Of a stretch of 64,000 nucleotides of DNA, positions 23,854 through 52,036 are shown in pieces (position 1 is the first letter of the stretch; every line of letters begins with the position of its first letter). Source of the stretch: Macrostomum lignano (Eukaryota); contig NIVC01002201.1 in NCBI GenBank assembly GCA_002269645.1, forward strand, positions 202,277-266,276, written 5' to 3'. Below the pieces are notes generated by a model that had not been told where the DNA came from, ran no database searches, and saw nothing but the letters and a program-made list of their open reading frames with translations. Both the position numbers and the translations under genes were made by a program.

Positions 23854-25015
23854 TACTTACTTACTACTGACGGGGGGCGCAGGCGCCGCGAATAGGCCGC
23901 GAGGCCCCTATCGCAACCCCAAGGTAAAAGAGCACAAGGATTAGCCTTGGGGGTGCGCCCAGTCCCCGCCAGTAGTCGGCAGGTCCGCAGTGGAGGCATC
24001 GGCGACCCTCATCCGGCCGGAGTCCCGGACGAAGGCGCGGAGGTCTCGGATATTGTCCGCGGTGGTCAGCTCGTCCATCCGCTGGGGGTGGCCGAGGTAT
24101 TTGTGCCGCGCCTTGTTGAAGTAAGGGCAGAAGGTGACGTGATGCTCCGCGGTCTCCTCTCCTATGCCACAGAAGGGACAGGTGGGAGGGCAACCGGTTT
24201 GCAACGATATATGTCTCTGGAAGAATCCGTGGCCGGTTAGGACCATGCACATCTCCCTGAGGTCGGTTCTGTTAAGCGAAATCAGATAATCAGAGACTTT
24301 CCTGTTCAGGTTAGGCATGGCAGAGCGGCTCTGCCTGTACTCGGTGCAGCTGTTCCAGTGGAGCTGGTGCTGCTGATGGAGCCACCTGTTGATATGGCGG
24401 GTGACTTGCGACCTGGGGGTGGGTAGCCTCATCAGACGGTGGTTGCCGTCTGGGTTGCTGCCCTCCTTGGCGAGAGAGTCCGCGAGCTCGTTGCCCAGGA
24501 TGTTGCTGTGACCAGGTGTCCAGATAATTCTAATCCTGTTAAGGACTGAGAGAGATTGCACACTGCGGTGGCATTGAGATACTGTAGCAGCGGAGATATT
24601 CTCAGTGGTTAAGGCCTTAATAGCAGCTTGGCTATCAGTGTAGAAATTAATGTCAAAATTATTAATGTTCGCCTGAAACAGTTGCTGGGCACACTGCTCA
24701 ATGGCGCAAATTTCAGCTTGGAAAACTGAGGTGTTCTCACCGAGGTGCAGACTTTCCTGGAGAAGCATCTTACCCTCGTGGAAAATGGCAATACCCGCTC
24801 CAGCGCGGCCGTTGAACAGCGAGCCGTCGGTGAAGCAGTGAATGCCCTGGCTGCGCCGGTTCACACCGACATCCAGCGGAATGTTGTCTCGGCCAGGGAT
24901 GGCGGTCTTGAAGCCCCTCCTGATGTTGAGGGCGGGAGGTCGACTATCCACATTGCCCAGGTCCATGTGGATGTTGTTAAGGTCGCGGCGGACAAAGTCC
25001 ATATGCTACTTATGC
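23854..25015 (-). mobile_element. 5'-truncated non-LTR retrotransposon (RNase H-bearing, I-group-like)
   Basis: 14-bp TSD TCTTTTTGTCTACT at 23840-23853 and 25016-25029. 3' tail of (AGTA/TAAG)n at ~23854-23868 and a GC-rich 3' UTR hairpin. Internal ORF has RNase H and a CCHC knuckle but no RT or endonuclease. Confidence 0.9.
23941..25002 (-). CDS. RNase H (non-LTR RT-associated type) plus C-terminal CCHC zinc knuckle, 353 aa uninterrupted ORF
   Basis: Catalytic motifs [43 protein letters not shown], followed by LTGHG...CPFC-x7-EHHVTFCP. Confidence 0.88.
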
Positions 25016-27432: not shown

Positions 27433-30400
27433 ATGTCATTTATTGCGCTAATCGCCCTGTCCCATATGGTGATCGCTTCCGTATTGGCCGCATCTGGTAA
27501 CGACCCGGTCATCACAAATCCGCCCACCGCCATGTCGGCATTGCGCGGCACTTCTCTGTCCTTGACTTGTACGGCTGTTGGAGATCCGAAACCGCGTATT
27601 ACGTGGTACAATGCTACGAGTGGTCGTCAGGTTGGTGTATGATATTGCCTTGCTTTGAGAACTGCATTCATGTCATGTAGTCGCTTCCCATTAACATATC
27701 TGTAGGTTCAATATGCCATTTGAAAGCTTCAAATAGATTTACCATCTGGAAGCTTAAAATATCATCTAGAAGCTTCACATATCATCTAGAAGCTTCACAT
27801 ATCATCTGGAAGCTTCACATATCATCTGAAAGCTTCACATATCATCTGGAAGCTTCGCATATCATCTGAAAGCTTCACCTATCATCTAGAAGCTTCACAT
27901 ATCATCTGGAAGCCTCACCTATCATCTAGAAGCTTCACATATCATCTAGAAGCTTCACATATCATCTGGGAGCTGCACATATCATCTGGAAGCTTGACAT
28001 ATCATCTGAGAGCTTCACATATCATCTTAGAGGCTTCGCATATCATCTGGAAGCTTCACATATCATCTGGAAGCTTCACATATCATCTGGAAGCTTCACA
28101 TATCATCTGGAAGCTTCACTTATCCTCTGGAAGCTTCACATATCATCTGGAAGCTTCACATATCATCTGGAAGCTTCACATCACCTGGAAGCTTCACATA
28201 TCATCTGGAAGCTTCACATATCATCTGGAAGCTTCGCATATCTCGTAAAAGCACTAAATATCTTATGCAAGTTTGATACATCGTTCAAACAATGATTTAA
28301 CCACATCAATGAACTATATTAAACCTACCCCTAAACTGACAGGTACACTCAATGTCAGACGACCCAGTTCACAGCATGATCCACCTAGACAGCTCCGGTA
28401 AGCTGACCTTCCTATCATTCGAAGCCAAATTCGAGGGTCGCTACTATTGCAACGCCAGCAACGAGCATGGTTCGACTGTTAGCGACCCAGTCTGGGCTAG
28501 GATTGCTTACCTAAACGACAAGTTCCGCTCGGAGCCGCAGAGTAAATCGGTACCAACGGGTTCTACCATAGAGATTGAATGCGACCCACCAGATGGCCAG
28601 CCTAGGCCGGAAGTGTCCTGGCGTAAAAACGGCCAATCAATAGTACCCGAGGACGGTCGCATAGTTGTTATGGACAATGGCCATTTGCGCATAATGCGAG
28701 CCGGTCCATCCGACGCCGGCGAGTACGCTTGTCGAGCTAAAAATATCGCCGGCGACCAGCTCTCAGCGTCCGCCATCATCAGCGTCAAATCTAAGCCGGT
28801 ATTCCGCGTAGCCCCATCCGATTTAGACAGAATGCAAGGCGAGAATGCTACGTTTAACTGCGCTGCTGTTGGCGATCCGGCGCCTACGCTCAACTGGCGC
28901 AAAGACAATGGACAAATAGTAAAGTCGCGCTCGTTTTCCCATAGCAACGGTTCGTTAACCGTGTTTAATCTGGCCCCAACAGACGCTGGCAAGTACATCT
29001 GCGAAGCGTCGAACAGTGCCGGAACTAACGAAGCCTTAGCCACTTTAACCGTTCGTTTTAAGCCGGAATTTCGCGAAACACCGGTCGACCAAGTTGCCGT
29101 AGAAGGCCACCGAGTAGTATTTCGTTGTCGAGTAGTCGGTAATCCAAAGCCGAATATATTCTGGTCGCAGGATAAAGGTATGTACATCTTCCCCAATAAT
29201 GCGCCAAACGATGACGAGAAACTTCGCGGAGTCAACGTTACAACGGACGGATCTTTAGTGATCGATCCAGTTAGGCCTATTCACCAGGGCAAGTACGAGT
29301 GCCATGCTAATAGCTACGCTGGCAGTGTGCAATCCTCTGCCACGTTAACCGTGACAGCCAGAGCCGCTCTCGCACCAATCATCTCTGTCGGGCCGCAGAG
29401 TCAGTCAGTGACGCGTGGCCAAGATCTCCAATTGAATTGCGAACTTGATCTTGAATACCAGCGCGCTCACGCCAGATTTAATCCGCAAACCATCTGGTAC
29501 AAGGATAGCGTGCCAATTAGGAAGACAAATCGATTCCATGTTAACTATGACGGCTCGTTGAAAATCTACGAATTGCAACCGTCCGATCGGGGTAATTACA
29601 CCTGCGCTATTAAAGTTGGCGGCAAGGTGACCACTTGGCCAACTCCGGCTATTATCGACGTGGTTAATTATCAGGCATCGCCGGACGGTATGAATCGTCG
29701 CAGGCCAGACGTTAGCGACCTGCCGCGGCCGCCTCGGTCCATTGCTGTCACTGATAAAGGAGCAGATTGGGTATTGTTAAAGGTGACGCCTAGAAGTTCG
29801 CCGGCTGTGCCCGGTAGCGAACTGGTTCGTTATCAAGTTGAATATCTGTCGCACGATCTCGGCACTGGATGGCAGTTGTACCCGCATCTGTTCGAATCCG
29901 AGACGCTGAAAGTAGACGGTCTGCGCAGCCAGACGTCTTATCAGTTCCTGGTGCGCACCGTCAACTCTAGGGGCGTTTCTAAGCCATCGACTTTGTCTCC
30001 GCCTGTGCACACGGAGGCCGAGACGCCAACAGATAAATTTGGCTATTCGGAAATACCGCAACACCTGCAAAATATGGGCTACAAAGATTTTCGGCTGCAA
30101 GTAATGAAAAAAGATGTTGTACGCGTGCTATGGAAAGTTCAGGCTAGGCAGAACACTTTAGAATTGACGCACGGATTTCACATCAACTATAGAGTGGTAC
30201 CGCTGCACCGATGTATCGACGATAATAAAGTCTTTCAACAGTACAAGAATAGCCATTGCTCGTTGAAGAATGAGCAGCGATTAAACTATCATTTGCGATC
30301 GCGATTGGATAGGCCAGATACTAGAGCTAGTGATGTTGATGCTTCGTCCTCTTCTGCAGCTGAGGCCAGCTCAGGCGGCGGCGGTGAGCACAGTCCGAGT

Positions 30401-33400
30401 TACGCTCGACAACAGACTAAAACAATTAGTTGGCGTTATAATAAAAAAGCTGCAAGCGCTAACACGGTTTCCGCGACTTTGTCGGATTTGATGTCGTTCA
30501 GCTGCTACGAGGTGACTGTTGAGAATTTTAATAAGCAGGCTATGTACGGCGAAACTAGGGGCTCGCGATCGGAGCCGCACACCGTGCTCACCTGGGAATA
30601 CTTCCCAACTAAGCCGCCTTCGAATATCAGAGCTAGCTGGCTTAGCAACACTAGCCTATCATTGTCTTGGACTCCGCCGCCAGTGACTGATAGCAATGGA
30701 ATTCTTACCGGCTTTGTTATTCATTTGCGTGAACCGGCTTCAGTCAGGCAGTCGCAGCAGTCGTCTGGTAACTCAACATCTGGACTGGAATCTCGCCTAG
30801 TTTGGCGCACGATTAGTATTAACAACGGTAGCGCTAATAGTCACGTGATTACCGGCTTAGATCCTGCCGCAGATTACACTTTACACCTGGCCGCTGTTAA
30901 TTGTCAAGGCGAAGGAACTAGATCGCCGCCTCTGCGCATACCATCGGCCATTTATAGTTTGAGCGCGGCGCAGGAAAAGAAGACCCTATTGAAAGAGCCG
31001 TGGTTTATCTCAATAATGGTTATTGGAATATTGCTTTGGCTAGCAGTCTGCGCTGTAGTCATCTTCGCCTTCCGGACCCGATGCCTGCATAGAAAGAAGC
31101 CGTATTATAAGCCTTATAACAAGGGGGTCGGTGGCGGCGGCAGCGGCGGCTGCGGTTCTGTCGACGCTAGCGGCAACGCTTTTCCATTGCTAAGCAAGTC
31201 GTCTGGCGGTCAGGATGACAGTTCGAATGGCTCGCGATTCACTGGCGGTGTTGGCCACGGCAGCGGGCACCAGTTGTCTGGCGAACTGCACCAGCAGTCA
31301 CCGCCGCCTCCGCCAGACCTTCTTGATCAGCAGCAGCAGCAGCAGCATCAGAGCGCCGCTAACAAGAAGCAGCAGCAGCAGCAGCAACAACTATTCTCCA
31401 ACAGTCCTATGCATATTCATCATATGCAGCAGCAGACTCCGTTGCTGATGCTGGGACACGGCGGTCCTGTTGTTGACCAGATGCTGCCAGCGGCTCCGAT
31501 GCCGCCGCCAGCTACGCTGCCCTCGGTGGCGCCTGTAGCCACTCCGTACGCATCGGCCAGTCTGATTCAGAGCGCTATCCAACAGGACCGACGCTACCAG
31601 CAGGGTTCGTTATATTCCAACGCCGACGAGCCAGCTTGCTCAATGAGCTGCTCAGATTGTAGCGACATCTCTGACAGTACAGCCGCTGTGCAAGATCATC
31701 ACCAGCACCAGCATCAGCGCCACGTGATGACCTCTTCAGGCGGCGCTGTTGGCAATATTAACTTCCCTAGTTACAAGCCGCCAGCTATGAATATCTGCGA
31801 TTTCACGCCGCCACCGCCGCCGCTGTCTGATCTGGTTAGCGGTGGAGGCGGCAGCGGCGGCAGCAGTCGGTGTCCGTATTACACGGCCGATTATCAACAG
31901 CAGCAGCCGGCTTGCAAATCTGGCAGCCAGTCGTCTGAGTCTGGAGCGCCTAGTTGCTATGCTAATTGTGCTCCGGCTTCTACTCAACAACAGCAGCGGC
32001 TTGACAATAAGCTGGTTGTCCGACTAACTCCTGTCACTACTGTTGGTGTTGGCGCCTACGTCACCACGGCCTCCAATTCGTCGTCTTGTTCGCCTAATTT
32101 CGGTCCGCAAGGATTGCCTAATACGGCAACGACAGTGCAGCAGGGTCGCGGCGGAGTTATTAGTCATCATCATCATCCAGGGTGAGCTGTCTACTCTTTA
32201 TGCATATTTGATGCGGGATGGGTATTAGCAGCTGACGAGACAAAACATTGGGAGTTCATTTCGATTGCCGGGTAGATAGACGTGAAAAGGGGAGAGGGTA
32301 GAGGGGAGAGAAGGGGAGAGGGTAGATAGACGTGAGAAGGGGAGAGGGTAGAGGGGTGTGAGAATGGGAGAGAGTAGAGGGGTGTGAGAAGGGGAGAGGG
32401 TAGAGGGGTGTGAGAAGGGGAGAGGGTAGAGGGGTGTGAGAAGGGGAGAGGGTAGAGGGGTATGAGAAGGGGAGAGGGTAGAGGGGTGTGAGAAGGGGAG
32501 AGGGTAGAGGGGTGTGAGAAGGGGAGAGGGTAGAGGGGTATGAGAAGGGGAGAGGGTAGAGGGGTGTGAGAAGGGGAGAGGGTAGAGGGGTGTGAGAAGG
32601 GGAGAGGGTAGAGGGGTGTGAGAAGGGGAGAGGGTAGAGGGGTGTGAGAAGGGGAGAGGGTAGAGGGGTGTGAGAAGGGGAGAGGGTAGAGGGGTGTGAG
32701 AAGGGTTGAGGGTAGAGGATGAGCGGCAGGTTAGTAGAGTTGAAAGGAAGAGGATAGAGCATAGACCTCATAATTGGTTATAACAAAAGGCTCAGAATTT
32801 CAGTATGTCTAACAAAAAATGAATAATTAATTCTGTTCTAGAACTTTACAATATTTTACACAAATTGCACTTTAATCAAAGTGCTATAGTTATATTATCA
32901 ACTTAAAAGACCTGAAAAGCACATGACGCTTCGAAAATCTGCTAGTAATGTATCAGGATTATATTGATTATATTACAAAGTATTGTTTGTAAGCGTGATA
33001 AGGGCTCGTGCAGAAACAAAAAGATTTTACGATGTTTTATAATGCAACTTATATAAAAATCTCGGCGGAATTATTGCTGGCGCCACTGAGACGCGAACCT
33101 GTCAAGGGAAAAAAGATATTTAGACAGCTTAATTAACATTAAATTCTATCCTCTGGTCGGGGCTAGAGAGAAATTGTAAAATGACAGGCGGCTGTCTGGC
33201 TGGTTGACTTGTGGCCAGGTGCCCCTAGCATTAGAGACACTAGTTAGGGCGGCTTATAAAATATTTAGGCATCTGTGTGCATTTTTGGTTTAACATGGAG
33301 CTTCCTGTGCTTATAAAATTCTATTTAAATGTCCTTTCTGACAGTCTTATTAAGAGAAAGCGCTTTGAATATTTAGCTGAAAGTCAGCAAGCCGATGGCA

Positions 33401-40312: not shown

Positions 40313-41629
40313 ACTGACCACTCCAGATCATCAGGCGCAGGCCGAGCCTGCTCAACAGAATCTCTTCTCATTAAAGACAAGACTCGCTATCCCTATTCGC
40401 TCTCAGCTGTCTCTGTGTAAAAATGTCATAGCGCTTTTAGTTTTAAATTTGTCTGTATTATTGTAAAATCATTTCTATAATTTCTTTAAGAAATCGAAAG
40501 TTGCTACAAGCAATGCAGGTTTGCTAGTGGCTTCTAATTATTATATATTGTAGTATAAATAACTGATTCAATATTATTTTACCCAACTCAACGACTTGTG
40601 TCTCATTTTCACTCAACTTCGTTTTTGCTTCTCAATTTGCATATTTTATTCGTCACGTTCTAATTTTTCTACTCTAAGTAGGAAAAAAGTGTATTTGTGT
40701 TTTATTTTCTCACTGTTGATTATTTGGTCCAAAAATGGATTCATTTTTGTTTTAATTAAAACTGTTTCTGTATGTATGAGGGATTTTAATAAATTAACAA
40801 AATAATAGTACAAAATGTGGCATTTTTTCTAATGGCATTGAAATTCCGGACTTGACCACGTCTTGTTTTATTGGTTGGCTAGTCAAATTTACTATAAATA
40901 ATAATTAATATGATTGTATGCAAACTGCAAGTGTCTGTACAATTTTTATTAGAATCTCAAACCTTATTGCTAGCCATCAGCTGGACCTTAATTGTTATTT
41001 TTTGTCCGCAACCACAACTGCAACCTATAACTCAATGCTCTTCTTGTGTAAAAGTCATCCTTGGCTTTTTTATTGTCTTTGTCATTTTTGCCTGCTCCGG
41101 AGTATCTGAGAATGTTGAAATTCTTTGTACATAAATCAATATAAAAACTGCATTGACTTTTAACTTGTTTATTAATGTGAAATAATATTCCTAATCGTCT
41201 GCTTTTAGTAGCTTATAAATTGCAGTATGCATATATATATAGCTCTTTGTTTATTCAATATTGCAAGACACATGTAGCTAGCTTTGTTATACTATTAACT
41301 TTGGTGGTATTTTAGTAATAATTATATTGTTCTACTGTTATTAAAACTACTAGTTTTATTGTGCTTCAAGTAACAAGGATATTGCAGAGATTAAGAATAT
41401 ATTTGCTTTTCTGATGCGAACAAAATCTTTTTAGCTTTATAAAAATATGTCCTTAGTGTACTTTTTCAGTGTCGCATACACAGTAGCGAATGCAATGCTG
41501 GTTTACTATTGTCAAAAATATACTCATTTATATGTGCATCTCAGACTTGGGCTATGCTAAGCCAGTGAAACAGTAACATGGTTTCTTTCTTTGTTGATTT
41601 TTGTTAAAAATAAAGCCATCCGATAGTGA

Positions 41630-44576
41630 AGAATCGCTCATCCAATATTCAATAATCGCCCATAAGATATTCAAGAATCGCTCATAAGATATTCAAGAAT
41701 CGCTCATAAGATATTAAATAATCGCCCATAAGATATTCAAGAATCGGCCATAAGATATTGAAGAATCGGCCATAAGATATTGAAGAATCGGCCATAAGAT
41801 ATTGAAGAATCGGCCATAAGATATTGAAGAATCGGCCATAAGATATTGAAGAATCGGCCATAAGATATTCAAGAATCGCCCATAAGATATTCAAGAATCG
41901 CCCATAAGATATTCAAGAATCGGCCATAAGATATTCAATAATCGGCCATAAGATATTGAAGAATCGGCCATAAGATATTCAAGAATCGGCCATAAGATAT
42001 TGAAGAATCGCCCATAAGATATTGAAGAATCGGCCATAAGATATTGAAGAATCGCCCATAAAATATTGAAGAATCGGCCATAAGATATTGAAGAATCGCC
42101 CATAAGATATTGAAGAATCGGCCATAAGATATTGAAGAATCGCCCATAAGATATTCAAGAATCGCCCATAAGATATTGAAGAATCGGCCATAAGATATTG
42201 AAGAATCGCCCATAAAATATTGAAGAATCGGCCATAAGATATTGAAGAATCGCCCATAAGATATTGAAGAATCGGCCATAAGATATTGAAGAATCGCCCA
42301 TAAGATATTGAAGAATCGCCCATAAAATATTGAAGAATCGGCCATAAGATATTGAAGAATCGCCCATAAGATATTGAAGAATCGGCCATAAGATATTGAA
42401 GAATCGCCCATAAAATATTGAAGAATCGGCCATAAGATATTGAAGAATCGCCATAAGATATTCAAGAATCGCCCATAAAATACTGAAGAATCGCCCATAA
42501 GATATTCAAGAATCGGCCATAAGATATTGAAGAATCGGCCATAAGATATTGAAGAATCGGCCATAAGATATTGAAGAATCGGCCATAAGATATTCAAGAA
42601 TCGCCCATAAGATATTCAAGAATCGCCCATAAGATATTCAAGAATCGGCCATAAGATATTCAATAATCGGCCATAAGATATTGAAGAATCGGCCATAAGA
42701 TATTGAAGAATCGCCCATAAGATATTCAAGAATCGGCCATAAGATATTGAAGAATCGCCCATAAGATATTGAAGAATCGGCCATAAGATATTGAAGAATC
42801 GCCCATAAGATATTGAAGAATCGCCCATAAGATATTGAAGAATCGCCTATAAGATATTGAAGAATCGGCCATAAGATATTGAAGAATCGCTCATAAGATA
42901 TTCAAGAATCGCCCATAAGATATTGAAGAATCGGCCATAAGATATTGAAGAATCGCCCATAAGATATTGAAGAATCGGCCATAAGATATTGAAGAATCGC
43001 CCATAAGATATTGAAGAATCGGCCATAAGATATTGAAGAATCGCTCATAAGATATTGAAGAATCGCCCATAAGATATTGAAGAATCGCCCATAAGATATT
43101 GAAGAATCGCCTATAAGATATTGAAGAATCGCCCATAAGATATTGAAGAATCGCCTATAAGATATTGAAGAATCGGCCATAAGATATTGAAGAATCGCCT
43201 ATAAGATATTCAAGAATCGCCCATAAGATATTGAAGAATCGCCCATAAGATATTGAAGAATCGGCCATAAGATATTGAAGAATCGCCCATAAGATATTGA
43301 AGAATCGGCCATAAGATATTGAAGAATCGCCCATAAAATATTGAAGAATCGGCCATAAGATATTGAAGAATCGCCCATAAGATATTGAAGAATCGCCCAT
43401 AAGATATTGAAGAATCGCCCATAAAATATTGAAGAATCGCCTATAAGATATTGAAGAATCGCCCATAAGATATTGAAGAATCGCCCATAAGATATTGAAG
43501 AATCGCCTATAAGATATTGAAGAATCGGCCATAAGATATTGAAGAATCGCCATAAGATATTCAAGAATCGCCCATAAAATACTGAAGAATCGCCCATAAG
43601 ATATTCAAGAATCGGCCATAAGATATTGAAGAATCGGCCATAAGATATTGAAGAATCGCCCATAAGATATTCAAGAATCGCACATAAGATATTCAAGAAT
43701 CGCCCATAAAATATTGAAGAATCGGCCATAAGATATTGAAGAATCGCCCATAAGATATTGAAGAATCGGCCATAAGATATTGAAGAATCGCCCATAAGAT
43801 ATTCAAGAATCGCCCATAAGATATTGAAGAATCGGCCATAAGATATTGAAGAATCGCCCATAAGATATTGAAGAATCGGCCATAAGATATTGAAGAATCG
43901 CCCATAAGATATTGAAGAATCGGCCATAAGATATTGAAGAATCGCCCATAAGATATTGAAGAATCGGCCATAAGATATTGAAGAATCGGCCATAAGATAT
44001 TGAAGAATCGCCCATAAGATATTGAAGAATCGCCCATAAGATATTGAAGAATCGCCCATAAAATATTGAAGAATCGGCCATAAGATATTGAAGAATCGCC
44101 CATAAAATATTGAAGAATCGGCCATAAGATATTGAAGAATCGCCATAAGATATTCAAGAATCGCCCATAAAATACTGAAGAATCGCCCATAAGATATTCA
44201 AGAATCGGCCATAAGATATTGAAGAATCGGCCATAAGATATTGAAGAATCGCCCATAAGATATTCAAGAATCGCACATAAGATATTCAAGAATCGCCCAT
44301 AAAATATTGAAGAATCGGCCATAAGATATTGAAGAATCGCCCATAAGATATTGAAGAATCGGCCATAAGATATTGAAGAATCGCCCATAAGATATTCAAG
44401 AATCGCCCATAAGATATTGAAGAATCGGCCATAAGATATTGAAGAATCGCCCATAAGATATTGAAGAATCGGCCATAAGATATTGAAGAATCGGCCATAA
44501 GATATTGAAGAATCGGCCATAAGATATTGAAGAATCGGCCATAAGATATTGAAGAATCGCCCATAAGATATTGAAA
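41630..44576. repeat. 22-bp satellite (AAGATATTGAAGAATCG(G/C)CCAT), about 134 units
   Basis: Direct reading; 22-aa period in the ORF track. Confidence 0.97.
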
Positions 44577-45046
44577 ATGCATGTATAAAAGTACTATGGC
44601 ATGCTTCAGTCAATTGTGCTCATACACAATATTTTAGAATGATAGATATTTTGCAGGTATTTTGCAGAAAATTAACAAATTGGCCAGCATAGCGATTACA
44701 TAAAAGAAACAAAAAATTGTTCAACTTTGTAGGCTTTATCAAAATTTATAAGTAGACTGTTAGATGTCCGAGCTTGTACTGTGCATGAACATGTTCTAGT
44801 GTTATTACGAGTACTGCGAATTAGAAAATGTAATAACACTAATTGATCTCTGAATGTAATATTAATAAAAAATATGCAATTGCCAGAAGACAGCAAGAGT
44901 ATTTTCAAACGGTTAAATTCAATCATATTTAACTAGGCTTATCAAATTTCATCTAAGCTTATCATACTGACACTTACAAACCCTAGAAGTAGTCATTTTA
45001 CTGGACTATTAGAAATTTTTACATTAGTTAGTTACAGAATAAGGAT

Positions 45047-45850
45047 CGAAATCATGAGAGTCGCCCTCGAAATCACCGGTGATGAGAGAATCGCCCTGGA
45101 AATCATCAGTGATGAGAGAATCGCACTGGAAATCATCAGTGATGAGAGAGTCGCCCTGGAAATCATCAGTGATGAGAGAATCGCACTGGAAATCACCGGT
45201 GATGAGAGAATCGCCCTGGAAATCACCGGTGATGAGAGAATCGCACTGGAAATCATCAGTGATGAGAGAGTCGCCCTGGAAATCATCAGTGATGAGAGAA
45301 TCGCACTGGAAATCACCGGTGATGAGAGAATCGCCCTGGAAATCACCGGTGATGAGAGAATCGCACTGGAAATCATCAGTGATGAGAGAGTCGCCCTCGA
45401 AATCACCGGTGATGAGAGAATCGCACTGGAAATCACCGGTGATGAGAGAATCGCCCTGGAAATCACCGGTGATGAGAGAATCGCACTGGAAATCATCAGT
45501 GATGAGAGAATCGCCCTGGAAATCACCGGTGATGAGAGAATCGCACTGGAAATCACCGGTGATGAGAGAATCGCCCTGGAAATCACCGGTGATGAGAGAA
45601 TCGCCCTGGAAATCACCGGTGATAAGAGAATCACCCCGGAAATCATCAATAATGAGAGAATCACCCTGGAAATCACCGGTGATGAGAGAATCGCCCTGGA
45701 AATCACCGGTGATGAGAGAATTACCCTGGAAATCACCGGTGATGAGAGAATCACCCTGGAAATCACCGGTGATGAGAGAATCACCCTGGAAATCACCGGT
45801 GATGAGAGAATCGCCCTGGAAATCACCGGTGATGAGAGAATCACCCCGAT
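45047..45850. repeat. 30-bp minisatellite (GAAATCACCGGTGATGAGAGAATCGCCCTG), about 27 units
   Basis: Direct reading; each unit has the 12-bp palindrome ATCACCGGTGAT or its ATCATCAGTGAT variant. Confidence 0.96.
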
Positions 45851-45865
45851 AGCCTCGGTCACTGC

Positions 45866-48800
45866 TCAACAGCCATCCACAAACGCAGTCATGAGTCGCA
45901 GAGTAACCCTGCCGTGCTCGCCGTCCGAGTTGCCTCCTTCAACCTCTTGACAGCTGCCGCCGGCGCCGCAGTAGGAGCCGCCGCCGCCGCCTCCGTGATA
46001 GCGGTTAACCCCGGCGCCCCCGCCGCTGAAGCCGCCGCCAGCGCCTCCGGCTCCGTAGTTGTCAGCAGCGCCACCACCTCCGCCGCCGCCGAAGCCTCCG
46101 TTGCCGCCGTTACCGACGCCACCGACGCCGCCGACGCCGCCGACCCAGCCGTCGGCCAGACCGTCGCCTCGTTCGCCGTCGCGAGTGCCTCGCCTCGGGT
46201 TGACGGCCCGGCCCAGCCAGCCGGCGCCGCAGCCGCCGTGAGTCTGCCTTGATGGAGTGTCTCCAGGAGTGTTCTGGCCAGGGTGTCCGTTGTAACCTCC
46301 AGTTCCTCTGGTGTTGTCGTACACGGAAGATGCTGATGAGCGGCCTCCATTAGCTGTACTTCTGCCTGGCGCACCTGCATTTCAGTATTGGAGGGAACTG
46401 TGGATGATGAATGAGAATCTGAGAATCATTGATGAGAATCTATTGAGAATCATCGATGAGAATCTATTAAGAATCATCGATGAGAATCTATTGAGAATCA
46501 TCGATTAGAATCTATTAAGAATCATCGATGAGAATCTATTGAGAATCATCGATGAGAATCTATTGAGAATCATCGATAAGAATCTATTGAGAATCATCGA
46601 TGAGAATTTATTGAGAATCATCGATTAGAATCTATTAAGAATCATCGATGAGAATCTATTGAGAATCATCGATAAGAATCTATTGAGAATCATCGATGAG
46701 AATCTATTGAGAATCATCAATGAGAATTTATTGAGTATCATGGATAAGAATCTATTGAGAATCATTGATGAGAATCTATTGAGAATCATTGATGAGAATC
46801 TATTGAGAATCATGGATGAGAAGCTATTGAGAATCTATTGATAATCATGAATGAGAATCTATTGAGTATCATGGATGAGAATCTATTGAGAATCATTGAT
46901 GAGAATCTATTGAGAATCATGGATGAGAATCTATTCAAAATCATCGATGAGAATCTATTCAGTATCATGAATCAGAATCTATTGAGTATCATGGATGAGA
47001 ATCTATTGAGAATCATTGATGAGAATCTATTGAGAATCATGGATGAGAATCTATTCAAAATCATTGATGAGAATCTATTCAGTATCATGAATGAGAATCT
47101 ATTGAGTATCATGGATGAGAATCTATTGAGTATCATGGATGAGAATCTATTGAGTATCATGGATGAGAATCTATTGAGAATCTATTGAGTATAATGGATG
47201 AGAATCTATTGAGAATCATTGATGAGAATCTATTGAGAATCATGGATGAGAATCTATTGAGAATCATGGATGAGAAGCTATTAAGAATCATTGATGAGAA
47301 TCTACTGAGAATTATGGATAAATGGATGAGAATCTATTGTGAATCATGAATAAGAATCTATTGAGAATCATTGATGAGAATCTACTGAGAATCATTGATG
47401 AGAATCTATTGAAAATCACGGATGAGAATTTATTGAGCATCATGGATGAGAATCTATTGAGAATCATGGATGAGAATCTATTGAGAATCATTGATGAGAA
47501 TCTATTCAGAATCATGGATAAGAATCTAATCAGAATCATGGATGAGAATCTACTGAGTATCACAGATGAGAATCTATTAAGAATCATTGATGACAAAACT
47601 ATTGATAATCATGAATGAGAATATATTGAGAATCATGAATGAGAATCTATTTAGAATCATGGATGAGAATCTATTGAGAATTATGGATTAATGGATGAGA
47701 ATATGTTGAGAATCACGGATGAGAATTTATTGAGTATCATGGAAAATAATCTATTGAGAATAATTGATAAGAATCTATTCAGAATCATGAATGAGAATCT
47801 ATTGAGAATCATTGATGAGAATCTATTCAGAATCATGGATGAGAATCTATTGAGAATTATGGATTAATGGATGAGAATATGTTGAGAATCACGGATGAGA
47901 ATTTATTGAGTATCATGGAAAATAATCTATTGAGAATAATTGATGAGAATCTATTGAGAATAATTGATAAGAATCTATTCAGAATCATGAATGACAATCT
48001 ATTGAGAATCATTGATGAGAATCTATTGAGAATCATGGATGAGAATCTATTGAGAATTATGGATTAATGGATGAGAATATGTTGAGAATCACGGATGAGA
48101 ATTTATTGAGTATCATGGATAAGAATCTATTGAGAATCATGGATGAGAGTCTATTCAGAATCATGGATGAGAATCTATTGAGAATCATGGATGAGAATCT
48201 ATTGAGAATCATGGATGAGAATCTATTGAGAATCATGGATGAGAATCTATTGAGAATCATGGATGAGAATCTATTCAGAATCATGGATGAGAATCTATTT
48301 AGAATCATGGATGAGAATCTATTGAGTATCACAGATGATAATCTATTAAGAATCATGGATGAGAATCTTTTGAGAATCATTAATGAGAATCTATTGAGAA
48401 TCATGGATGAGAATCTACTGAGAATCATGGATGAGTATCATGGATGAGAATCAATTGAGAATCATTGATGAGAATCTATTGAGAATCATGGATGAGAATC
48501 ATTGATGAGAATCTATTGAGAATCATGGATGAGAATCTATTGAGTATCATGGATAAGAATCTATTGAGAATCATGGATGAGAATCTATTGAGAATTATGG
48601 ATGAGAATCTATTGAGAATTATGGATGAGAATCTATTCAGAATCATGGATGAGAATCTATTGAGAATCATGGATGAGAATCTACTGAGAATCATGGATGA
48701 GAATCAATTGAGAATCATTGATGAGAATCTATTGAGAATCATGGATGAGAATCTACTGAGAATCATGGATGAGAATCATTGATGAGAATCTATTGAGAAT

Positions 48801-51647
48801 CATGGATGAGAATCTATTGAGTATCATGGATGAGAATCTATTGAGTATCATGGATAAGAATCTATTGAGAATCATGGATGAGAATCTATTGAGAATTATG
48901 GATAAGAATCTATTCAGAATCATGGATGAGAATCTATTGAGAATCTACTGAGAATCATGGATGAGAATCTATTGAGTATCATGGATAAGAATCTATTGAG
49001 AATCATGGATGAGAATCTATTCAGAATCATGGATGAGAGTCTATTCAGAATCATAGATTAGAACCGATTGAGAATGAGAATCCTGGATGAGAATCTATTG
49101 AGAATTATGGATCATGGACTACTATAATACATAGAAAAACGGGCTCACCACTGTGTGCATGAGAGGCGCCGCCGCCTCCTCCAGCCGCAGCCAGCAGATA
49201 ATTATCGCCAGTCCGATAGACGAAGCTGCCTCCGCCGCCTCCTGCTCCAGCCTTGCCCGAGCTGGAACTGTCCACACTGCTGCCCGCCTGTCCAACAACC
49301 ACGGCTAGCCGAGTGCCCGCTGTCAGGTTGAAATTGCCTCTGACGGTGGCGCCCCGACCTCCGGCATGATTTCTGATTGGATTGTCGCCGCCTTTGGCGC
49401 CAGCCGCCGCGATGCGGTAGCAGCCAGTGACGCCGATTAGCGAGTATTGAATGAATCCGGCTGGATATTCGGGTTCGAGATTTGGGATCTTGAATGGGTC
49501 TGATGGAGACCGTCAGGAGTGTTTTGTAGAGGCTGTCAGGAGTGTTTAGTTGGTGTCAGGAGTTTTTATTTGGGGTGTCAGGAGTGTTTTTGGGGTGTCA
49601 GGAGTGTTTAGTTGGGGTGTCAGGATTGTCAAGATGGGGTGTCAGGAGTGCAAAGTTATGGTGTCGATCAGGAGAGCCAACAGCTGACTCAACAATCAAA
49701 ATTAAAAGCAGCAACTACTTACGGTCAGAGAACTGAAAAGTAATCACTATTGCTTCGCCCTTGACCCAAACAGTGACGTCATCAGCTTGGCTGGTCAATA
49801 TTGGTTGCAGAGCAGTGAGTCTGCTTTCGGCTAGGGCAGAACTTCCCGGAGCAGTCACTGCCATAACCAGCTGACAAGAAGTCAAAGCACTCTGCCCAGA
49901 GGTTGCAGCCAAGAAGCAAGCGCTTGCAGTTTTGCAGCGAATCAGACAGTCAATGTCAGAGAGGGCGGTAAATTTTTCAACTGCACCTGCGGCTGCCATC
50001 GCCTGGTTAGTGAGATTGAAACCGGTCAGTGACTTGATGTCAGTGAATTCTGTAGAACTCACAATAGACGGTGTCGCGAGTCTGATGACTGGAAAAATTG
50101 AGAATTATACAAGATATTTCTTTTCATACCTTATTCTTTTGTTCTTAGCTTGACTTGTGCGATGTAGCAGCAGGTCATGTGACAGACTGTGTGGCTGTTG
50201 AAACAGGTCATGTGACAGACTGTGTGCTGTTGAAACAGGTCATGTGACAGACTGTGTGCTGTTGAAACAGGTCATGTGATAGACTGTGTGCTGTTGAAAC
50301 AGGTCATGTGACAGACTGTGTGCTGTTGAAACAGGTCATGTGACAGACTGTGTGCTGTTGAAACAGGTCATGTGACAGACTGTGTGCTGTTGAAACAGGT
50401 CATGTGATAGACTGTGTGCTGTTGAAACAGGTCATGTGACAGACTGTGTGGCTGTTGAAACAGGTCATGTGACAGGCTGTGTGGCTGTTGAAACAGGTCA
50501 TGTGACAGACTGTGTGGCTGTTGAAACAGGTCATGTGATAGACTGTGTGCTGTTGAAACAGGTCATGTGACAGACTGTGTGCTGTTGAAGCAGGTCATGT
50601 GACAGACTGTGTGCTGTTGAAACAGGTCATGTGACAGACTGTGTGGCTGTTGAAGCAGGTCATGTGACAGACTGTGTGCTGTTGAAGCAGGTCATGTGAC
50701 AGACTGTGTGCTGTTGAAGCAGGTCATGTGACAGACTGTGTGCTGTTGAAGCAGGTCATGTGACAGACTGTGTGGCTGTTGAAACAGGTCATGTGACAGA
50801 CTGTGTGCTGTTGAAGCAGGTCATGTGACAGACTGTGTGGCTGTTAAAACAGGTCATGTGACAGACTGTGTGCTGTTGAAGCAGGTCATGTGACAGACTG
50901 TGTGGCTGTTGAAGCAGGTCATGTGACAGACTGTGTGCTGTTGAAACAGGTCATGTGACAGACTGTGTGCTGTTGAAGCAGGTCATGTGACAGACTGTGT
51001 GCTGTTGAAGCAGGTCATGTGACAGACTGTGTGCTGTTGAAACAGGTCATGTGACAGACTGTGTGGCTGTTGAAACAGGTCATGTGACAGACTGTGTGCC
51101 GTTGCTTCAGGTCATGTGACAGACTGTGTGCTGTAGCAGCAGGTCATGTGACAGACTGTGCGATGTAGCAGCAGGTCATGTGACAGACTGTGTGCTGTTG
51201 AAGCAGGTCATGTGACAGACTGTGTGCTGTTGAAACAGGTCATGTGACAGACTGTGTGGCTGTTGAAACATGTCATGTGATAGACTGTGTGCTGCTGAAA
51301 CAGGTCATGTGACAGACTGTGTGCTGTTGAAGCAGGTCATGTGACAGACTGTGTGCTGTAGCAGCAGGTCATGTGACAGACTGTGTGCTGTAGCAGCAGG
51401 TCATGTGACAGACTGTGTGCTGTAGCAGCAGGTCATGTGACAGACTGTGTGCTGTAGCAGCAGGTCATGTGACAGACTGTGTGCTGTAGCAGCAGGTCAT
51501 GTGACAGACTGTGTGCTGTAGCAGCAGGTCATGTGACAGACTGTGTGCTGTAGCAGCAGGTCATGTGACAGACTGTGTGCTGGTGCAGCAGGTCAAGTGT
51601 GATAGGAAACGCTTACCATTTGCAGCAATAATTAAGTAGAAGAGCAT
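45866..51647 (-). CDS. Secreted PAN/apple-like + ALK/LTK-type glycine-rich domain protein, 418 aa, 4 exons
   Basis: Exons on -: 51647-51617 (MLFYLIIAAN, G|gtaagc), 50088-49723 (tttttccag|, C|gtaagt), 49499-49149 (ctccatcag|, G|gtgagc), 46374-45866 (aaatgcag|, TGA). All introns are phase 1; total 1257 nt. Exon 2 has C-x3-C-x5-C-x13-C-x-L (CLIRCKTASAC...CQL). Exons 3-4 carry GCYRIAAAGAKGG, GGRGATVRGNFNL...VVVGQAG, GGGGGSFVY, LLAAAGGGGGA, GGFGGGGGGG, GGAGGGFSGG, GGGGGSYC and HGRVTL, the motif order of the ALK/LTK glycine-rich domain. Confidence 0.85.
46405..49115. repeat. 24-bp satellite (GATGAGAATCTATTGAGAATCATG), about 113 units, filling intron 3 of the PAN-GRD gene
   Basis: Direct reading; the unit is a dimer of a TGAGAATC 12-mer. 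Confidence 0.96.
49505..49650. repeat. Short degenerate (GGTGTCAGGAGTGTTT..) repeat in PAN-GRD intron 2
   Basis: TGTCAGGAGT recurs several times. Confidence 0.8.
50150..51595. repeat. 32/33-bp minisatellite (CAGGTCATGTGACAGACTGTGTGCTGTTGAAA), about 45 units, in PAN-GRD intron 1
   Basis: Direct reading. Confidence 0.96.
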
Positions 51648-52036
51648 GACTTCGGCAACCAATTTCTCCAATTTTATTTCACTAACCTTGCCAATGGTTA
51701 CAGAAATGGTTGCGTGAATCAGTCACGGATCCTGACAAATTTATAGTAAACATGATTTTTCGACGAGAACCAATCCATTTTAACAGCAGTTGAAGTGTCA
51801 GTCAAAGCATTCTTGGAAAATGAAGCACAAGAAAAATCAACATTGTTTGAAGAGGACCTAAAAAACCCGTTCATATGAGCGTAAATAAATGAATTCACAC
51901 GTCTGAGAGCTCTTCTCCGCGATTTTAATTGCCTGAGCACCACTCAGTCTCAAAAAAGATGATTGAGAAATTTTCATCTTAATAAAATCGTTTTTCTATT
52001 CTTTGTTGACTTTTTCAAGTGCTAAGCTTCTGCTAG

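What the first reader, a model, noticed from the sequence alone, without database searches (positions are those of the whole stretch)
45866..51647. Secreted PAN/apple + ALK/LTK glycine-rich-domain protein with no transmembrane segment or kinase
Seen: signal peptide, 4-Cys PAN-like motif, then a complete glycine-rich domain ending HGRVTLRLMTAFVDGC-stop. The gene is invisible to the ORF track as a unit because about 4.4 kb of satellites fill its introns. Known: in ALK/LTK receptor kinases this domain is a TNF-like sandwich plus a polyglycine-II helix bundle that binds ligand, and PAN domains mediate protein or carbohydrate binding. Inference: a soluble ALK-ectodomain-like protein that could be a ligand trap, a secreted signal, or a mucus, adhesion or defence effector. 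Similar kinase-less glycine-rich proteins may exist in other marine invertebrates, so novelty needs a database check.
Basis: partly seen in the sequence, partly recalled or inferred. Interest (0 to 1): 0.75.

Follow-up and report, generated by a model that had tools for sequence, protein, structure and literature searches.

The report
Secreted kinase-less ALK-type glycine-rich protein gene
This is an intact but unannotated four-exon gene of the flatworm Macrostomum lignano for a secreted protein built from the same glycine-rich fold that the human ALK and LTK receptors use to bind their ligands; it has no membrane anchor or kinase and is one more member of a large, uncharacterised family rather than a new kind of protein.

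Summary
On the minus strand, four exons (51647-51617, 50088-49723, 49499-49149, 46374-45866) join through canonical GT-AG, phase-1 introns into a 418-aa reading frame. About 4.26 kb of satellites fill the introns.

- **Glycine-rich domain: confirmed.** It is a real ALK/LTK-type TNF-like plus glycine-rich domain. Evidence: Pfam PF12810 at 3.7e-10 on exon 3; a family profile that hits only ALK, LTK and SCD-2 in the PDB (down to 1.6e-17); and a paralogue model that matches only ALK/LTK structures.
- **No membrane anchor or kinase.** The only hydrophobic stretch is the N-terminal signal. The stop codon sits where intact paralogues also end. No kinase motif occurs anywhere in the window.
- **PAN/apple label: not supported.** It rests only on a C-x3-C-x5-C-x13-C motif. 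Pfam, a PDB profile, an exhaustive HMMER search and Foldseek all fail to support it. The module occurs only in M. lignano.
- **Context.** The window is M. lignano. The same architecture is already in UniRef in at least 18 clusters. Kinase-less relatives occur in cnidarians and bacteria and score closer to this protein than ALK does.

Most likely it is a soluble extracellular binding protein, not an ALK decoy. It is a new member of a known, uncharacterised kind, of moderate interest.

The parts
51617..51647 (-). Exon 1: the ATG plus the first 10.3 codons (MLFYLIIAAN), the start of the signal peptide; the donor is G|GTAAGC.
   Evidence: This is the first in-frame ATG, with an in-frame stop 26 codons upstream. 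Paralogue P0003 also starts MLF....
51739..51745 (-). TATA-like TATAAAT about 95 nt upstream of the ATG; a possible core promoter.
   Evidence: Read from the sequence. Inference only.
50089..51616 (-). Intron 1 (1528 nt, phase 1), almost entirely a 32-bp satellite (50169-51599, 44 copies, 95% matches).
49723..50088 (-). Exon 2 (366 nt): the rest of the signal peptide plus the cysteine-knotted N-terminal module and linker (aa 11-132).
   Evidence: The acceptor is TTTTTCCAG|, the donor C|GTAAGT.
49874..49948 (-). Four-cysteine core C58-x3-C62-x5-C68-x13-C82 (DCLIRCKTASACFLAATSGQSALTSCQL). The spacing is PAN-like, but the module is restricted to this lineage.
   Evidence: HGF core cysteines at 70, 74, 84 and 96 from PMC9249922. 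No PAN match by HMM, profile or fold.
49500..49722 (-). Intron 2 (223 nt, phase 1) with a 22-bp minisatellite (49512-49650).
49149..49499 (-). Exon 3 (351 nt, aa 133-249): the N-terminal half of the TNF-like/glycine-rich domain, holding the TNF-like strands, the first poly-Gly motifs and the conserved NLT sequon at N190.
   Evidence: PF12810 ALK_LTK_GRD at E = 3.7e-10, 40.7 bits against a cut-off of 24.5..
46375..49148 (-). Intron 3 (2774 nt, phase 1), filled by a 24-bp satellite (46420-49112, about 112 copies).
45866..46374 (-). Exon 4 (509 nt, aa 250-418 plus TGA): the polyglycine-II region (36% Gly), the C385/C391 loop, the last two TNF-like strands, the terminal Cys and the stop codon.
   Evidence: A profile alignment to ALK and LTK runs to the last residue. 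Paralogues P0001, P0005 and P0009 end 1-2 residues after the same Cys.
45056..45846 (.). 30-bp satellite that begins 20 nt after the stop codon. It is 3' flank or 3' UTR and holds no further coding exon.
   Evidence: There is no AATAAA or ATTAAA within 1.5 kb.

Best explanation
The locus is an intact, unannotated Macrostomum lignano gene. It encodes a soluble secreted protein of 418 aa, about 398 aa once the signal peptide is removed.

**Shown by sequence or homology:**
- An N-terminal hydrophobic signal directs the protein into the secretory pathway.
- Next comes a small module with four cysteines, presumably forming two disulfides, that has been found only in M. lignano.
- A complete TNF-like plus glycine-rich domain of the PF12810 family follows. 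This is the fold that forms the ligand-binding region of ALK and LTK.
- The protein ends directly after that domain's last strand. There is no EGF-like module, no membrane anchor and no kinase.

**Inferred:**
- It has no catalytic motifs, so it acts by binding.
- The rigid beta-sandwich and polyglycine-II lattice is the conserved scaffold or binding face. It is 50-60% identical among paralogues.
- The fast-evolving N-module (12-27% identical) supplies paralogue-specific specificity.
- The family therefore looks like a lineage-expanded set of extracellular recognition or adhesion proteins (mucus, adhesion, defence or reproductive secretion), not a derivative of the ALK receptor.
For: - **Gene model:** canonical GT-AG, phase-1 junctions and a single open frame. 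Paralogues align across the junctions without gaps.
- **Domain identity:**
  - PF12810 at 3.7e-10 on exon 3.
  - A profile of the family including this protein hits ALK at 1.6e-17, LTK at 3.3e-16 (profile positions 124-391) and SCD-2 at 1.5e-9. The next hit is at E = 0.6.
- **Fold:**
  - The AlphaFold model of paralogue P0002 has pLDDT above 90 over most of the domain.
  - Its 21 Foldseek matches with E <= 7e-6 are all ALK or LTK structures. The next match is at E = 0.66.
- **Secreted and soluble:**
  - The N-terminus is the only hydrophobic segment.
  - The NLT sequon in the domain is conserved.
  - The stop codon lies at the position where P0001, P0005 and P0009 also end.
  - No kinase motifs occur in any frame of the window.
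  - No coding-like ORFs lie in the 12 kb downstream.
  - No paralogue similarity lies outside the four exons.
- **Family:**
  - At least 18 M. lignano UniRef clusters share the architecture.
  - The relatives are extracellular proteins of cnidarians and bacteria, carrying T9SS, PEP-CTERM, PKD or FN3 partner domains.
- **Species:** the neighbouring ORF is 100% identical to BOX15_Mlig007270g1.
Against: - There is no transcript evidence.
- No canonical poly(A) signal lies within 1.5 kb of the stop, and a satellite starts 20 nt after it.
- The family's conserved N-SSTGRNGSIQ motif reads NLEPEYPAGFIQ here, so this copy is divergent.
- The whole protein gives no Pfam hit. Only the exon-3 part passes, presumably because the composition-bias correction removes the glycine-rich half.
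- The function is entirely inferred. No member of the kinase-less family has been characterised.
Confidence: 0.7

Rival explanations
1. Soluble decoy or ligand trap for the flatworm's own ALK-type receptor. The free domain would sequester an ALKAL-, Jeb- or HEN-1-like ligand and damp signalling.
For: It has the same fold as the ALK/LTK ligand-binding region, and it is secreted without a kinase. Soluble decoys are common for other receptor families (general knowledge).
Against: - ALK is the most distant detectable relative. Single-sequence phmmer gives 15 bits and E = 0.06. Bacterial proteins score 55-64 bits and cnidarian-type proteins 83-104.
- The family is therefore not a truncated ALK.
- In the profile alignment, the acidic ALK residue in ...HGEVNIK... 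faces Arg in this protein (HGRVTLR) and Phe or Tyr in relatives. From memory, not verified here, that acidic residue contacts the ligand.
- An expansion to at least 18 clusters with a hypervariable N-module is not what a dedicated decoy looks like.
- No ALK or ligand gene of M. lignano was examined.
Confidence: 0.08
2. Structural or material protein. The flat polyglycine-II faces would self-associate or stick to surfaces, making the protein a component of adhesive, mucus, eggshell or stylet matrix rather than a specific binder.
For: - The C-terminal half is 36% glycine.
- The protein has nine cysteines, an odd number. The terminal Cys is conserved in paralogues and could form intermolecular disulfides.
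- Polyglycine-II bundles serve as adhesin and surface-binding modules elsewhere, for example phage S16 gp38 and the snow flea antifreeze protein, as reviewed in PMC13243192.
Against: - The domain is a compact globular fold of defined length with conserved non-glycine positions: 35-48% identity outside Gly.
- It is not an extensible low-complexity repeat.
- There is no evidence of tissue, abundance or cross-linking.
Confidence: 0.15
3. Unexpressed or decaying paralogue. The gene would be a recent duplicate stranded in satellite-rich DNA that still looks intact.
For: - It is absent from public protein sets. The best match is 55% identical.
- 4.26 kb of satellites fill the introns, and another array starts 20 nt after the stop.
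- There is no poly(A) signal.
- A family motif has diverged.
Against: - No frameshift or premature stop occurs in 1257 nt.
- All six splice sites are canonical and all introns are phase 1.
- Every invariant glycine and cysteine of the family is kept.
- A TATA-like box lies upstream.
- Satellite-filled introns also occur in the neighbouring ankyrin gene, so they are normal for this genome.
Confidence: 0.1
4. Incomplete model: the true product continues into EGF-like, transmembrane or kinase exons, making it a receptor.
For: UniRef calls fragments of the family 'receptor protein-tyrosine kinase' and calls P0011 'Protein kinase domain-containing'.
Against: - The TGA directly follows the conserved terminal Cys, where P0001, P0005 and P0009 also end.
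- No kinase motifs occur in any frame of 64 kb.
- Downstream minus-strand ORFs over 12 kb are non-coding-like.
- P0011 has no Pfam kinase hit. Its tail is a tandemly repeated peptide (HLHRGLRICFRVFLVLLV twice), which looks like read-through into a satellite.
- The 'kinase' names appear to follow from the PF12810 match alone.
Confidence: 0.03

Closest known systems
Ligand-binding TNF-like/glycine-rich domain of human ALK and LTK and C. elegans SCD-2 (PDB 7NX1, 7NX0, 7NWZ, 7LRZ, 7N00, 7LIR)
   Same: It is the same Pfam family (PF12810) and the same fold, a discontinuous TNF-like beta-sandwich with a polyglycine-II lattice inserted. The alignment is colinear from the first strand to the final strand and Cys.
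   Different: - There is no EGF-like module, transmembrane helix or kinase, and no MAM or LDLa region.
- Foldseek identity of the paralogue model to ALK/LTK structures is 21-26%, and 17-18% to C. elegans SCD-2.
- ALK is a more distant relative than the bacterial homologues.
- The N-terminal partner is a small cysteine module instead.
- The ligand-contact position is not conserved; that it is a contact is recalled from memory.
Uncharacterised M. lignano proteins A0A1I8I814, A0A1I8HRN4, A0A1I8GD17 and others (UniRef names 'WSC', 'Apple', 'PPC' or 'PE-PGRS' domain-containing; here P0001-P0011, P0018, P0229-P0235)
   Same: Same species, same architecture (signal peptide, four-cysteine module, linker with a conserved VW, glycine-rich domain, C-terminal Cys) and same end point. 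Identity in the glycine-rich domain is 50-60%.
   Different: - This copy is not in the protein sets; its best match is 55% identical.
- Its N-module is only 12-27% identical to theirs.
- The NSSTGRNG motif is replaced.
- Many database entries are fragments or chimeras, such as a calmodulin fusion and satellite read-through.
Kinase-less PF12810 proteins of cnidarians (Rhopilema esculentum 'PE-PGRS3-like', P0020; ENA assemblies P0012-P0017) and of bacteria (T9SS, PEP-CTERM, PKD or FN3 fusions)
   Same: They are secreted or surface proteins in which the glycine-rich domain is the C-terminal module and the protein ends right after its last strand. Overall identity to the cnidarian-type proteins is 44-49%, and 26-32% outside Gly.
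   Different: - They lack the four-cysteine module.
- They lack the Macrostomum-specific cysteines C159, C298 and C418.
- Their partner domains differ: EGF-like in Rhopilema, sorting signals in bacteria.
PAN/apple domains (HGF N domain, plasminogen, factor XI)
   Same: Four cysteines occur in the order C-x3-C-x5-C-x13-C, against C70, C74, C84 and C96 in HGF (PMC9249922). A low-confidence model puts C-x3-C on a helix followed by two Cys-bearing strands. UniRef labels some paralogues 'Apple domain-containing'.
   Different: There is no significant HMM, profile or structural match, and the module is found only in M. lignano.

Membership tests
Pfam PF12810 (ALK_LTK_GRD; TNF-like/glycine-rich domain family) | Match to the family HMM above the gathering score | tested here: met
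   The exon-3 product alone scores 40.7 bits against a cut-off of 24.5, E = 3.7e-10, covering profile positions 7-90 of 243. The whole protein and the whole domain return nothing, presumably because of the composition-bias correction on a sequence with 36% Gly.
Pfam PF12810 (ALK_LTK_GRD; TNF-like/glycine-rich domain family) | Colinear homology to solved ALK/LTK domains over the whole domain | tested here: met
   A profile of this protein plus 15 relatives hits ALK at 1.6e-17, LTK at 3.3e-16 (profile positions 124-391 against chain residues 32-315) and SCD-2 at 1.5e-9. Nothing else falls below E = 0.6.
Pfam PF12810 (ALK_LTK_GRD; TNF-like/glycine-rich domain family) | Fold: TNF-like beta-sandwich plus polyglycine-II lattice | tested here: met
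   Tested by proxy only. The model of paralogue P0002 (56% identical in the domain) has pLDDT of 87-97 over most of the long stretch (about 244-389) that has no alpha or beta assignment, and has flanking strands. Its 21 best Foldseek matches are all ALK or LTK structures, with E from 7.8e-11 to 7e-6 and TM 0.40-0.60 per target.
ALK/LTK receptor tyrosine kinases | Transmembrane helix after the ectodomain | tested here: not met
   The only Kyte-Doolittle 19-residue window above 1.6 is at residues 1-20. The C-terminus is RLMTAFVDGC followed by the stop.
ALK/LTK receptor tyrosine kinases | Cytoplasmic tyrosine kinase domain | tested here: not met
   No HRDxxxxN, DFG, GxGxxGxV or APE motif occurs in any of the six frames of the window. 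No coding-like ORFs lie downstream, and no extra paralogue similarity is found.
ALK/LTK receptor tyrosine kinases | Membrane-proximal EGF-like module following the glycine-rich domain | tested here: not met
   The stop codon comes immediately after the Cys that aligns with the last Cys of the ALK domain.
ALK/LTK receptor tyrosine kinases | Binding of an ALKAL-, Jeb- or HEN-1-type ligand | not testable with these tools
   Only an indirect hint exists: Arg replaces the acidic residue of the ALK HGEV strand. That residue's role in ligand contact is recalled from memory, not verified.
PAN/apple domain (PF00024 and relatives) | Match to a PAN family HMM or profile | tested here: not met
   - No Pfam family at E <= 1 for this module.
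- PAN_1 at E = 0.12 in one of seven paralogues, among unrelated noise.
- The family profile finds nothing in the PDB at E <= 10.
- Zero hits in 1.84 billion representatives.
PAN/apple domain (PF00024 and relatives) | Four strictly conserved core cysteines with the characteristic order and spacing | tested here: met
   C58, C62, C68 and C82 give C-x3-C-x5-C-x13-C, against HGF C70, C74, C84 and C96, which give C-x3-C-x9-C-x11-C (PMC9249922). A short motif of this kind is weak evidence on its own.
PAN/apple domain (PF00024 and relatives) | PAN fold (helix packed on an antiparallel sheet, pinned by two disulfides) | tested here: inconclusive
   The model of the exon-2 product has mean pLDDT 48. 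Foldseek finds no match with E <= 0.001 and no PAN structure among the top 50. A model this poor cannot decide either way.

The most novel reading that the evidence does not exclude
Kinase-less secreted proteins with the TNF-like/glycine-rich domain would form an ancient extracellular protein class shared by bacteria, cnidarians and flatworms. The ligand-binding region of ALK and LTK would have been recruited from this class.

In Macrostomum the fold would have been fused to a lineage-specific, fast-evolving disulfide module and amplified into a diversified repertoire of soluble recognition molecules. That would be a previously unrecognised family of invertebrate pattern-recognition or adhesion proteins built on a polyglycine-II lattice.
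Probability: 0.25. Interest if true: 0.65.

Novelty: new member of a known kind. Interest (0 to 1): 0.4.

Why it matters
- **Origin of the ALK/LTK ligand-binding fold.**
  - This fold has been studied only in the receptors.
  - This locus and its relatives show that the fold circulates widely as a free, secreted module.
  - In a genetically tractable flatworm that supports RNAi, in situ hybridisation and transgenesis, it has expanded into a family with a hypervariable partner module.
  - That gives a practical way to ask what the fold does outside kinase signalling and where the ALK ligand-binding region came from.
- **Annotation.** Satellite-filled introns hide intact genes from annotation in the M. 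lignano genome. 40% of this window is tandem repeat.
- **Limits.** The gene itself is one more paralogue of a family already in the databases, so it does not change any concept.

Tried and rejected
- **Whole-protein Pfam scan:** no hits. Rescanning by exon recovered PF12810, so I treat the blank as an effect of composition bias.
- **Single-sequence PDB search:** only marginal ALK hits, E about 0.06. The family profile replaced it.
- **Spliced 418-aa protein:** I did not try to get round this. I used a database paralogue and the contiguous exon-2 translation instead.
- **PAN tests:** all negative or uninformative.
- **More family members or extra exons in the window:** none found.
- **Kinase motifs and downstream ORFs:** none.
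- **Exact-product look-up of the neighbouring ORF:** not on record. Species identity came from the homologue search instead.
- **Literature:**
  - Nothing on Macrostomum glycine-rich or PE-PGRS-like proteins.
  - The single paper that mentions PF12810 says no function can be inferred.
  - The primary ALK/LTK structure papers are not held, so the ligand-contact residues could not be verified.
- **UniRef names** 'WSC', 'PPC', 'F5/8 type C', 'Calmodulin' and 'Protein kinase domain-containing' for paralogues. I rejected them as a guide to architecture.
  - Pfam finds none of these domains in the members scanned.
  - The aligned members carry the same four-cysteine module, or are chimeric or read-through predictions.

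Full report

Yes. Reading the minus strand of 45.8-51.7 kb and checking the exon borders by script gives four exons:
- 51647-51617 (31 nt);
- 50088-49723 (366 nt);
- 49499-49149 (351 nt);
- 46374-45866 (509 nt, including the TGA).

All three introns start with GT, end with AG and are phase 1. The joined CDS is 1257 nt and encodes 418 aa. The finding's coordinates are exactly the stop codon and the ATG.

The ATG is the first in its frame, with an in-frame stop 26 codons upstream. A TATAAAT lies about 95 nt upstream.

Tandem Repeats Finder places three arrays in the introns:
- a 32-bp satellite at 50169-51599 in intron 1;
- a 22-bp minisatellite at 49512-49650 in intron 2;
- a 24-bp satellite at 46420-49112 in intron 3.

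Together they cover 4263 bp of the 4525 bp of intron. The mechanical ORF list shows the gene only as fragments.

**2. The glycine-rich domain**

- **Pfam.**
  - The whole protein gives no Pfam hit.
  - The 117 aa encoded by exon 3, scanned alone, match PF12810 (ALK_LTK_GRD) at E = 3.7e-10 and 40.7 bits, against a gathering score of 24.5.
  - I attribute the blank on the full sequence to the composition-bias correction. The exon-4 part is 36% glycine.
- **PDB, single sequence.** The search returns only ALK chains, and marginally (E about 0.06).
- **PDB, family profile.**
  - A profile built from this protein and 15 relatives (alignment A1) hits ALK at 1.6e-17.
  - It hits LTK at 3.3e-16, across almost the whole domain.
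  - It hits C. elegans SCD-2 at 1.5e-9.
  - Nothing else falls below E = 0.6.
  - The alignment runs to the very last residue. The terminal Cys of this protein aligns with the last Cys of the ALK domain.
- **Structure.**
  - Its mean pLDDT is 74, and above 90 over most of the glycine-rich domain.
  - The TNF-like strands lie at both ends of the domain.
  - Between them is a long stretch, mostly high-confidence, with no alpha or beta assignment. That is what a polyglycine-II lattice looks like to DSSP.
  - Foldseek against the PDB gives 21 matches with E <= 7e-6, all of them ALK or LTK domains. The next match is at E = 0.66.

The homology is not only shared glycine content. At non-glycine positions the domain is 35-48% identical to M. 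lignano paralogues and 26-32% identical to cnidarian-type relatives.

**3. No membrane anchor and no kinase**

- The only hydrophobic segment is at residues 1-20 (Kyte-Doolittle maximum 1.77). The next best window scores 1.16.
- The tail is not hydrophobic, so a GPI signal is unlikely.
- Paralogues P0001, P0005 and P0009 end one or two residues after the same terminal Cys. The cnidarian-type proteins end right after the same strand.
- No kinase signature occurs in any frame of the 64-kb window.
- Minus-strand ORFs in the 12 kb downstream do not look coding.
- tblastn with 11 paralogues finds no family-related similarity outside the four exons; the only other matches are weak, about 16% identical, low-complexity alignments of P0001 to the intron-3 satellite on the opposite strand.
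- One paralogue is named 'Protein kinase domain-containing' (P0011).
  - It has no Pfam kinase hit.
  - Its tail is a peptide repeated twice in tandem.
  - I read that tail as a gene prediction running into a satellite. A satellite likewise begins 20 nt after the stop codon here.

**4. The N-terminal module**

The four cysteines are real: C58, C62, C68 and C82, giving C-x3-C-x5-C-x13-C. The spacing resembles the PAN core, which in HGF is C70, C74, C84 and C96 (PMC9249922). Every test of membership failed or could not decide:
- No Pfam family at E <= 1.
- PAN_1 at E = 0.12 in one of seven paralogues, among noise.
- No PDB hit for a module profile at E <= 10.
- No hit at all in an exhaustive phmmer search of 1.84 billion representatives.
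- An AlphaFold model with pLDDT 48, whose Foldseek matches are designed proteins and ribosomal proteins.
- A profile search of 5.8 billion proteins finds the module only in seven more M. lignano clusters, four of which carry a precomputed glycine-rich-domain (PF12810) hit.

I therefore call it a lineage-restricted four-cysteine module with PAN-like cysteine spacing. It may be a very divergent PAN domain, but that is not demonstrated.

**5. Whose gene, and how common is it?**

- **Species.**
  - The large ORF at 28352-32185 is 100% identical to NCBI BOX15_Mlig007270g1 of Macrostomum lignano.
  - That protein is a Robo homologue, with four Ig and FN3 domains and 33% identity to Schmidtea RoboA.
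  - The window is therefore M. lignano, a marine free-living flatworm.
- **Annotation status.** The glycine-rich gene itself is not in the protein collections. Its best match is 55% identical.
- **Family size.**
  - At least 18 UniRef90 clusters from M. lignano share the architecture.
  - Many are fragments or chimeras.
  - Their automatic names are inconsistent: WSC, Apple, PPC, PE-PGRS, receptor protein-tyrosine kinase.
- **Relatives outside flatworms, by phmmer bit score.**

| Group | Bit score |
|---|---|
| M. lignano paralogues | 85-280 |
| Cnidarian-type proteins | 83-104 |
| Bacterial proteins | 55-64 |
| ALK | 15 |

  - The cnidarian-type proteins are Rhopilema esculentum P0020 and unnamed ENA assemblies P0012-P0017. 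P0012 is an intronless 305-aa gene on a 4.8-Mb contig.
  - The bacterial PF12810 proteins carry T9SS, PEP-CTERM, PKD or FN3 partner domains.
  - ALK is thus the outlier of the family, not its centre.

**6. How it most likely works**

Shown:
- a signal peptide;
- a disulfide-bonded small module;
- a complete TNF-like/glycine-rich domain;
- nothing after that domain.

A sequon (N190, NLT) is conserved in all M. lignano paralogues, which fits passage through the secretory pathway.

Inferred:
- With no catalytic signature, the protein acts by binding.
- Among paralogues the glycine-rich domain is 50-60% identical, while the N-module is only 12-27% identical.
- That contrast suggests a conserved scaffold or effector face paired with a diversifying recognition head. 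The pattern is typical of expanded invertebrate recognition, adhesion or reproductive-secretion families.
- The protein has nine cysteines, an odd number.
  - C159, C298 and the terminal C418 occur together only in the Macrostomum clade.
  - A free or intermolecular cysteine is therefore possible.

The ligand-trap idea is weakened by three points:
- the distance from ALK;
- the size of the expansion;
- an Arg at the position of the acidic residue in the ALK HGEV strand. That this residue contacts the ligand is my recollection. The primary papers were not available.

**7. Caveats**

- There is no transcript evidence.
- No AATAAA or ATTAAA lies within 1.5 kb of the stop.
- This copy has lost the family's NSSTGRNG motif.
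- The fold evidence is by proxy.
- No kinase-less family member has a known function. The only paper that names PF12810 says so explicitly for a fungal case.

**8. Verdict**

It is unproven for PAN and improbable for an ALK decoy.

This is a new, unannotated member of a known but uncharacterised family. Interest is moderate (0.4). The value lies in the family as a tractable route to the non-kinase biology and the origin of the ALK/LTK ligand-binding fold, not in this single locus.

Noticed in passing
window 28352-32185 (+): A 1277-aa single-exon ORF with four Ig and FN3 domains and a transmembrane-like stretch. It is 100% identical to M. lignano BOX15_Mlig007270g1 (1638 aa) and 33% identical to Schmidtea RoboA. 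It is a Robo homologue, and it identifies the species of the window.
   Followed up: partly
window 23941-25002 (-): A 353-aa ORF with an RNase H domain (1e-13) and a weak RVT_3 match: a remnant of a retroelement.
   Followed up: partly
window 55601-61628 (+): An ankyrin-repeat gene in several exons (about 55601-55975, 60194-60595 and 61224-61628). A 2.8-kb satellite with a 15-bp unit (57364-60193) fills one intron, and the mechanical ORF 58289-60595 runs from the satellite straight into an ankyrin exon. This is the same annotation hazard as in the glycine-rich gene.
   Followed up: partly
whole window: Tandem repeats with TRF score >= 200 cover 25.8 kb, or 40% of the window. There are dozens of distinct arrays with unit lengths from 4 to 401 bp.
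   Followed up: partly
window 41622-44575, 45056-45846, 46420-49112: Three different satellites in and downstream of the gene share a GAGAATC or GAATCGCCC core. Their units are 22 bp (GATATTGAAGAATCGCCCATAA), 30 bp (GAGAATCGCCCTGGAAATCACCGGTGATGA) and 24 bp (TGAGAATCATGGATGAGAATCTAT). They may descend from one ancestral unit.
   Followed up: no
window 45866-46374 (-) and paralogues P0001, P0002, P0005, P0009: The mature protein has an odd number of cysteines (nine). C159, C298 and the C-terminal C418 occur together only in the Macrostomum clade and are absent from cnidarian-type relatives. This hints at an extra disulfide plus one free or intermolecular cysteine.
   Followed up: no
protein P0011 (M. 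lignano, UniRef A0A1I8...; not in the window): After the glycine-rich domain, this database paralogue continues into a peptide repeated twice in tandem (HLHRGLRICFRVFLVLLV). This looks like a gene prediction reading into a satellite. Its 'Protein kinase domain-containing' name has no Pfam support.
   Followed up: partly
window 44366-45865 (-), downstream of the stop codon: No AATAAA or ATTAAA lies within 1.5 kb downstream of the stop codon, and the 30-bp satellite begins 20 nt after it. The 3' end of the transcript is undefined.
   Followed up: no
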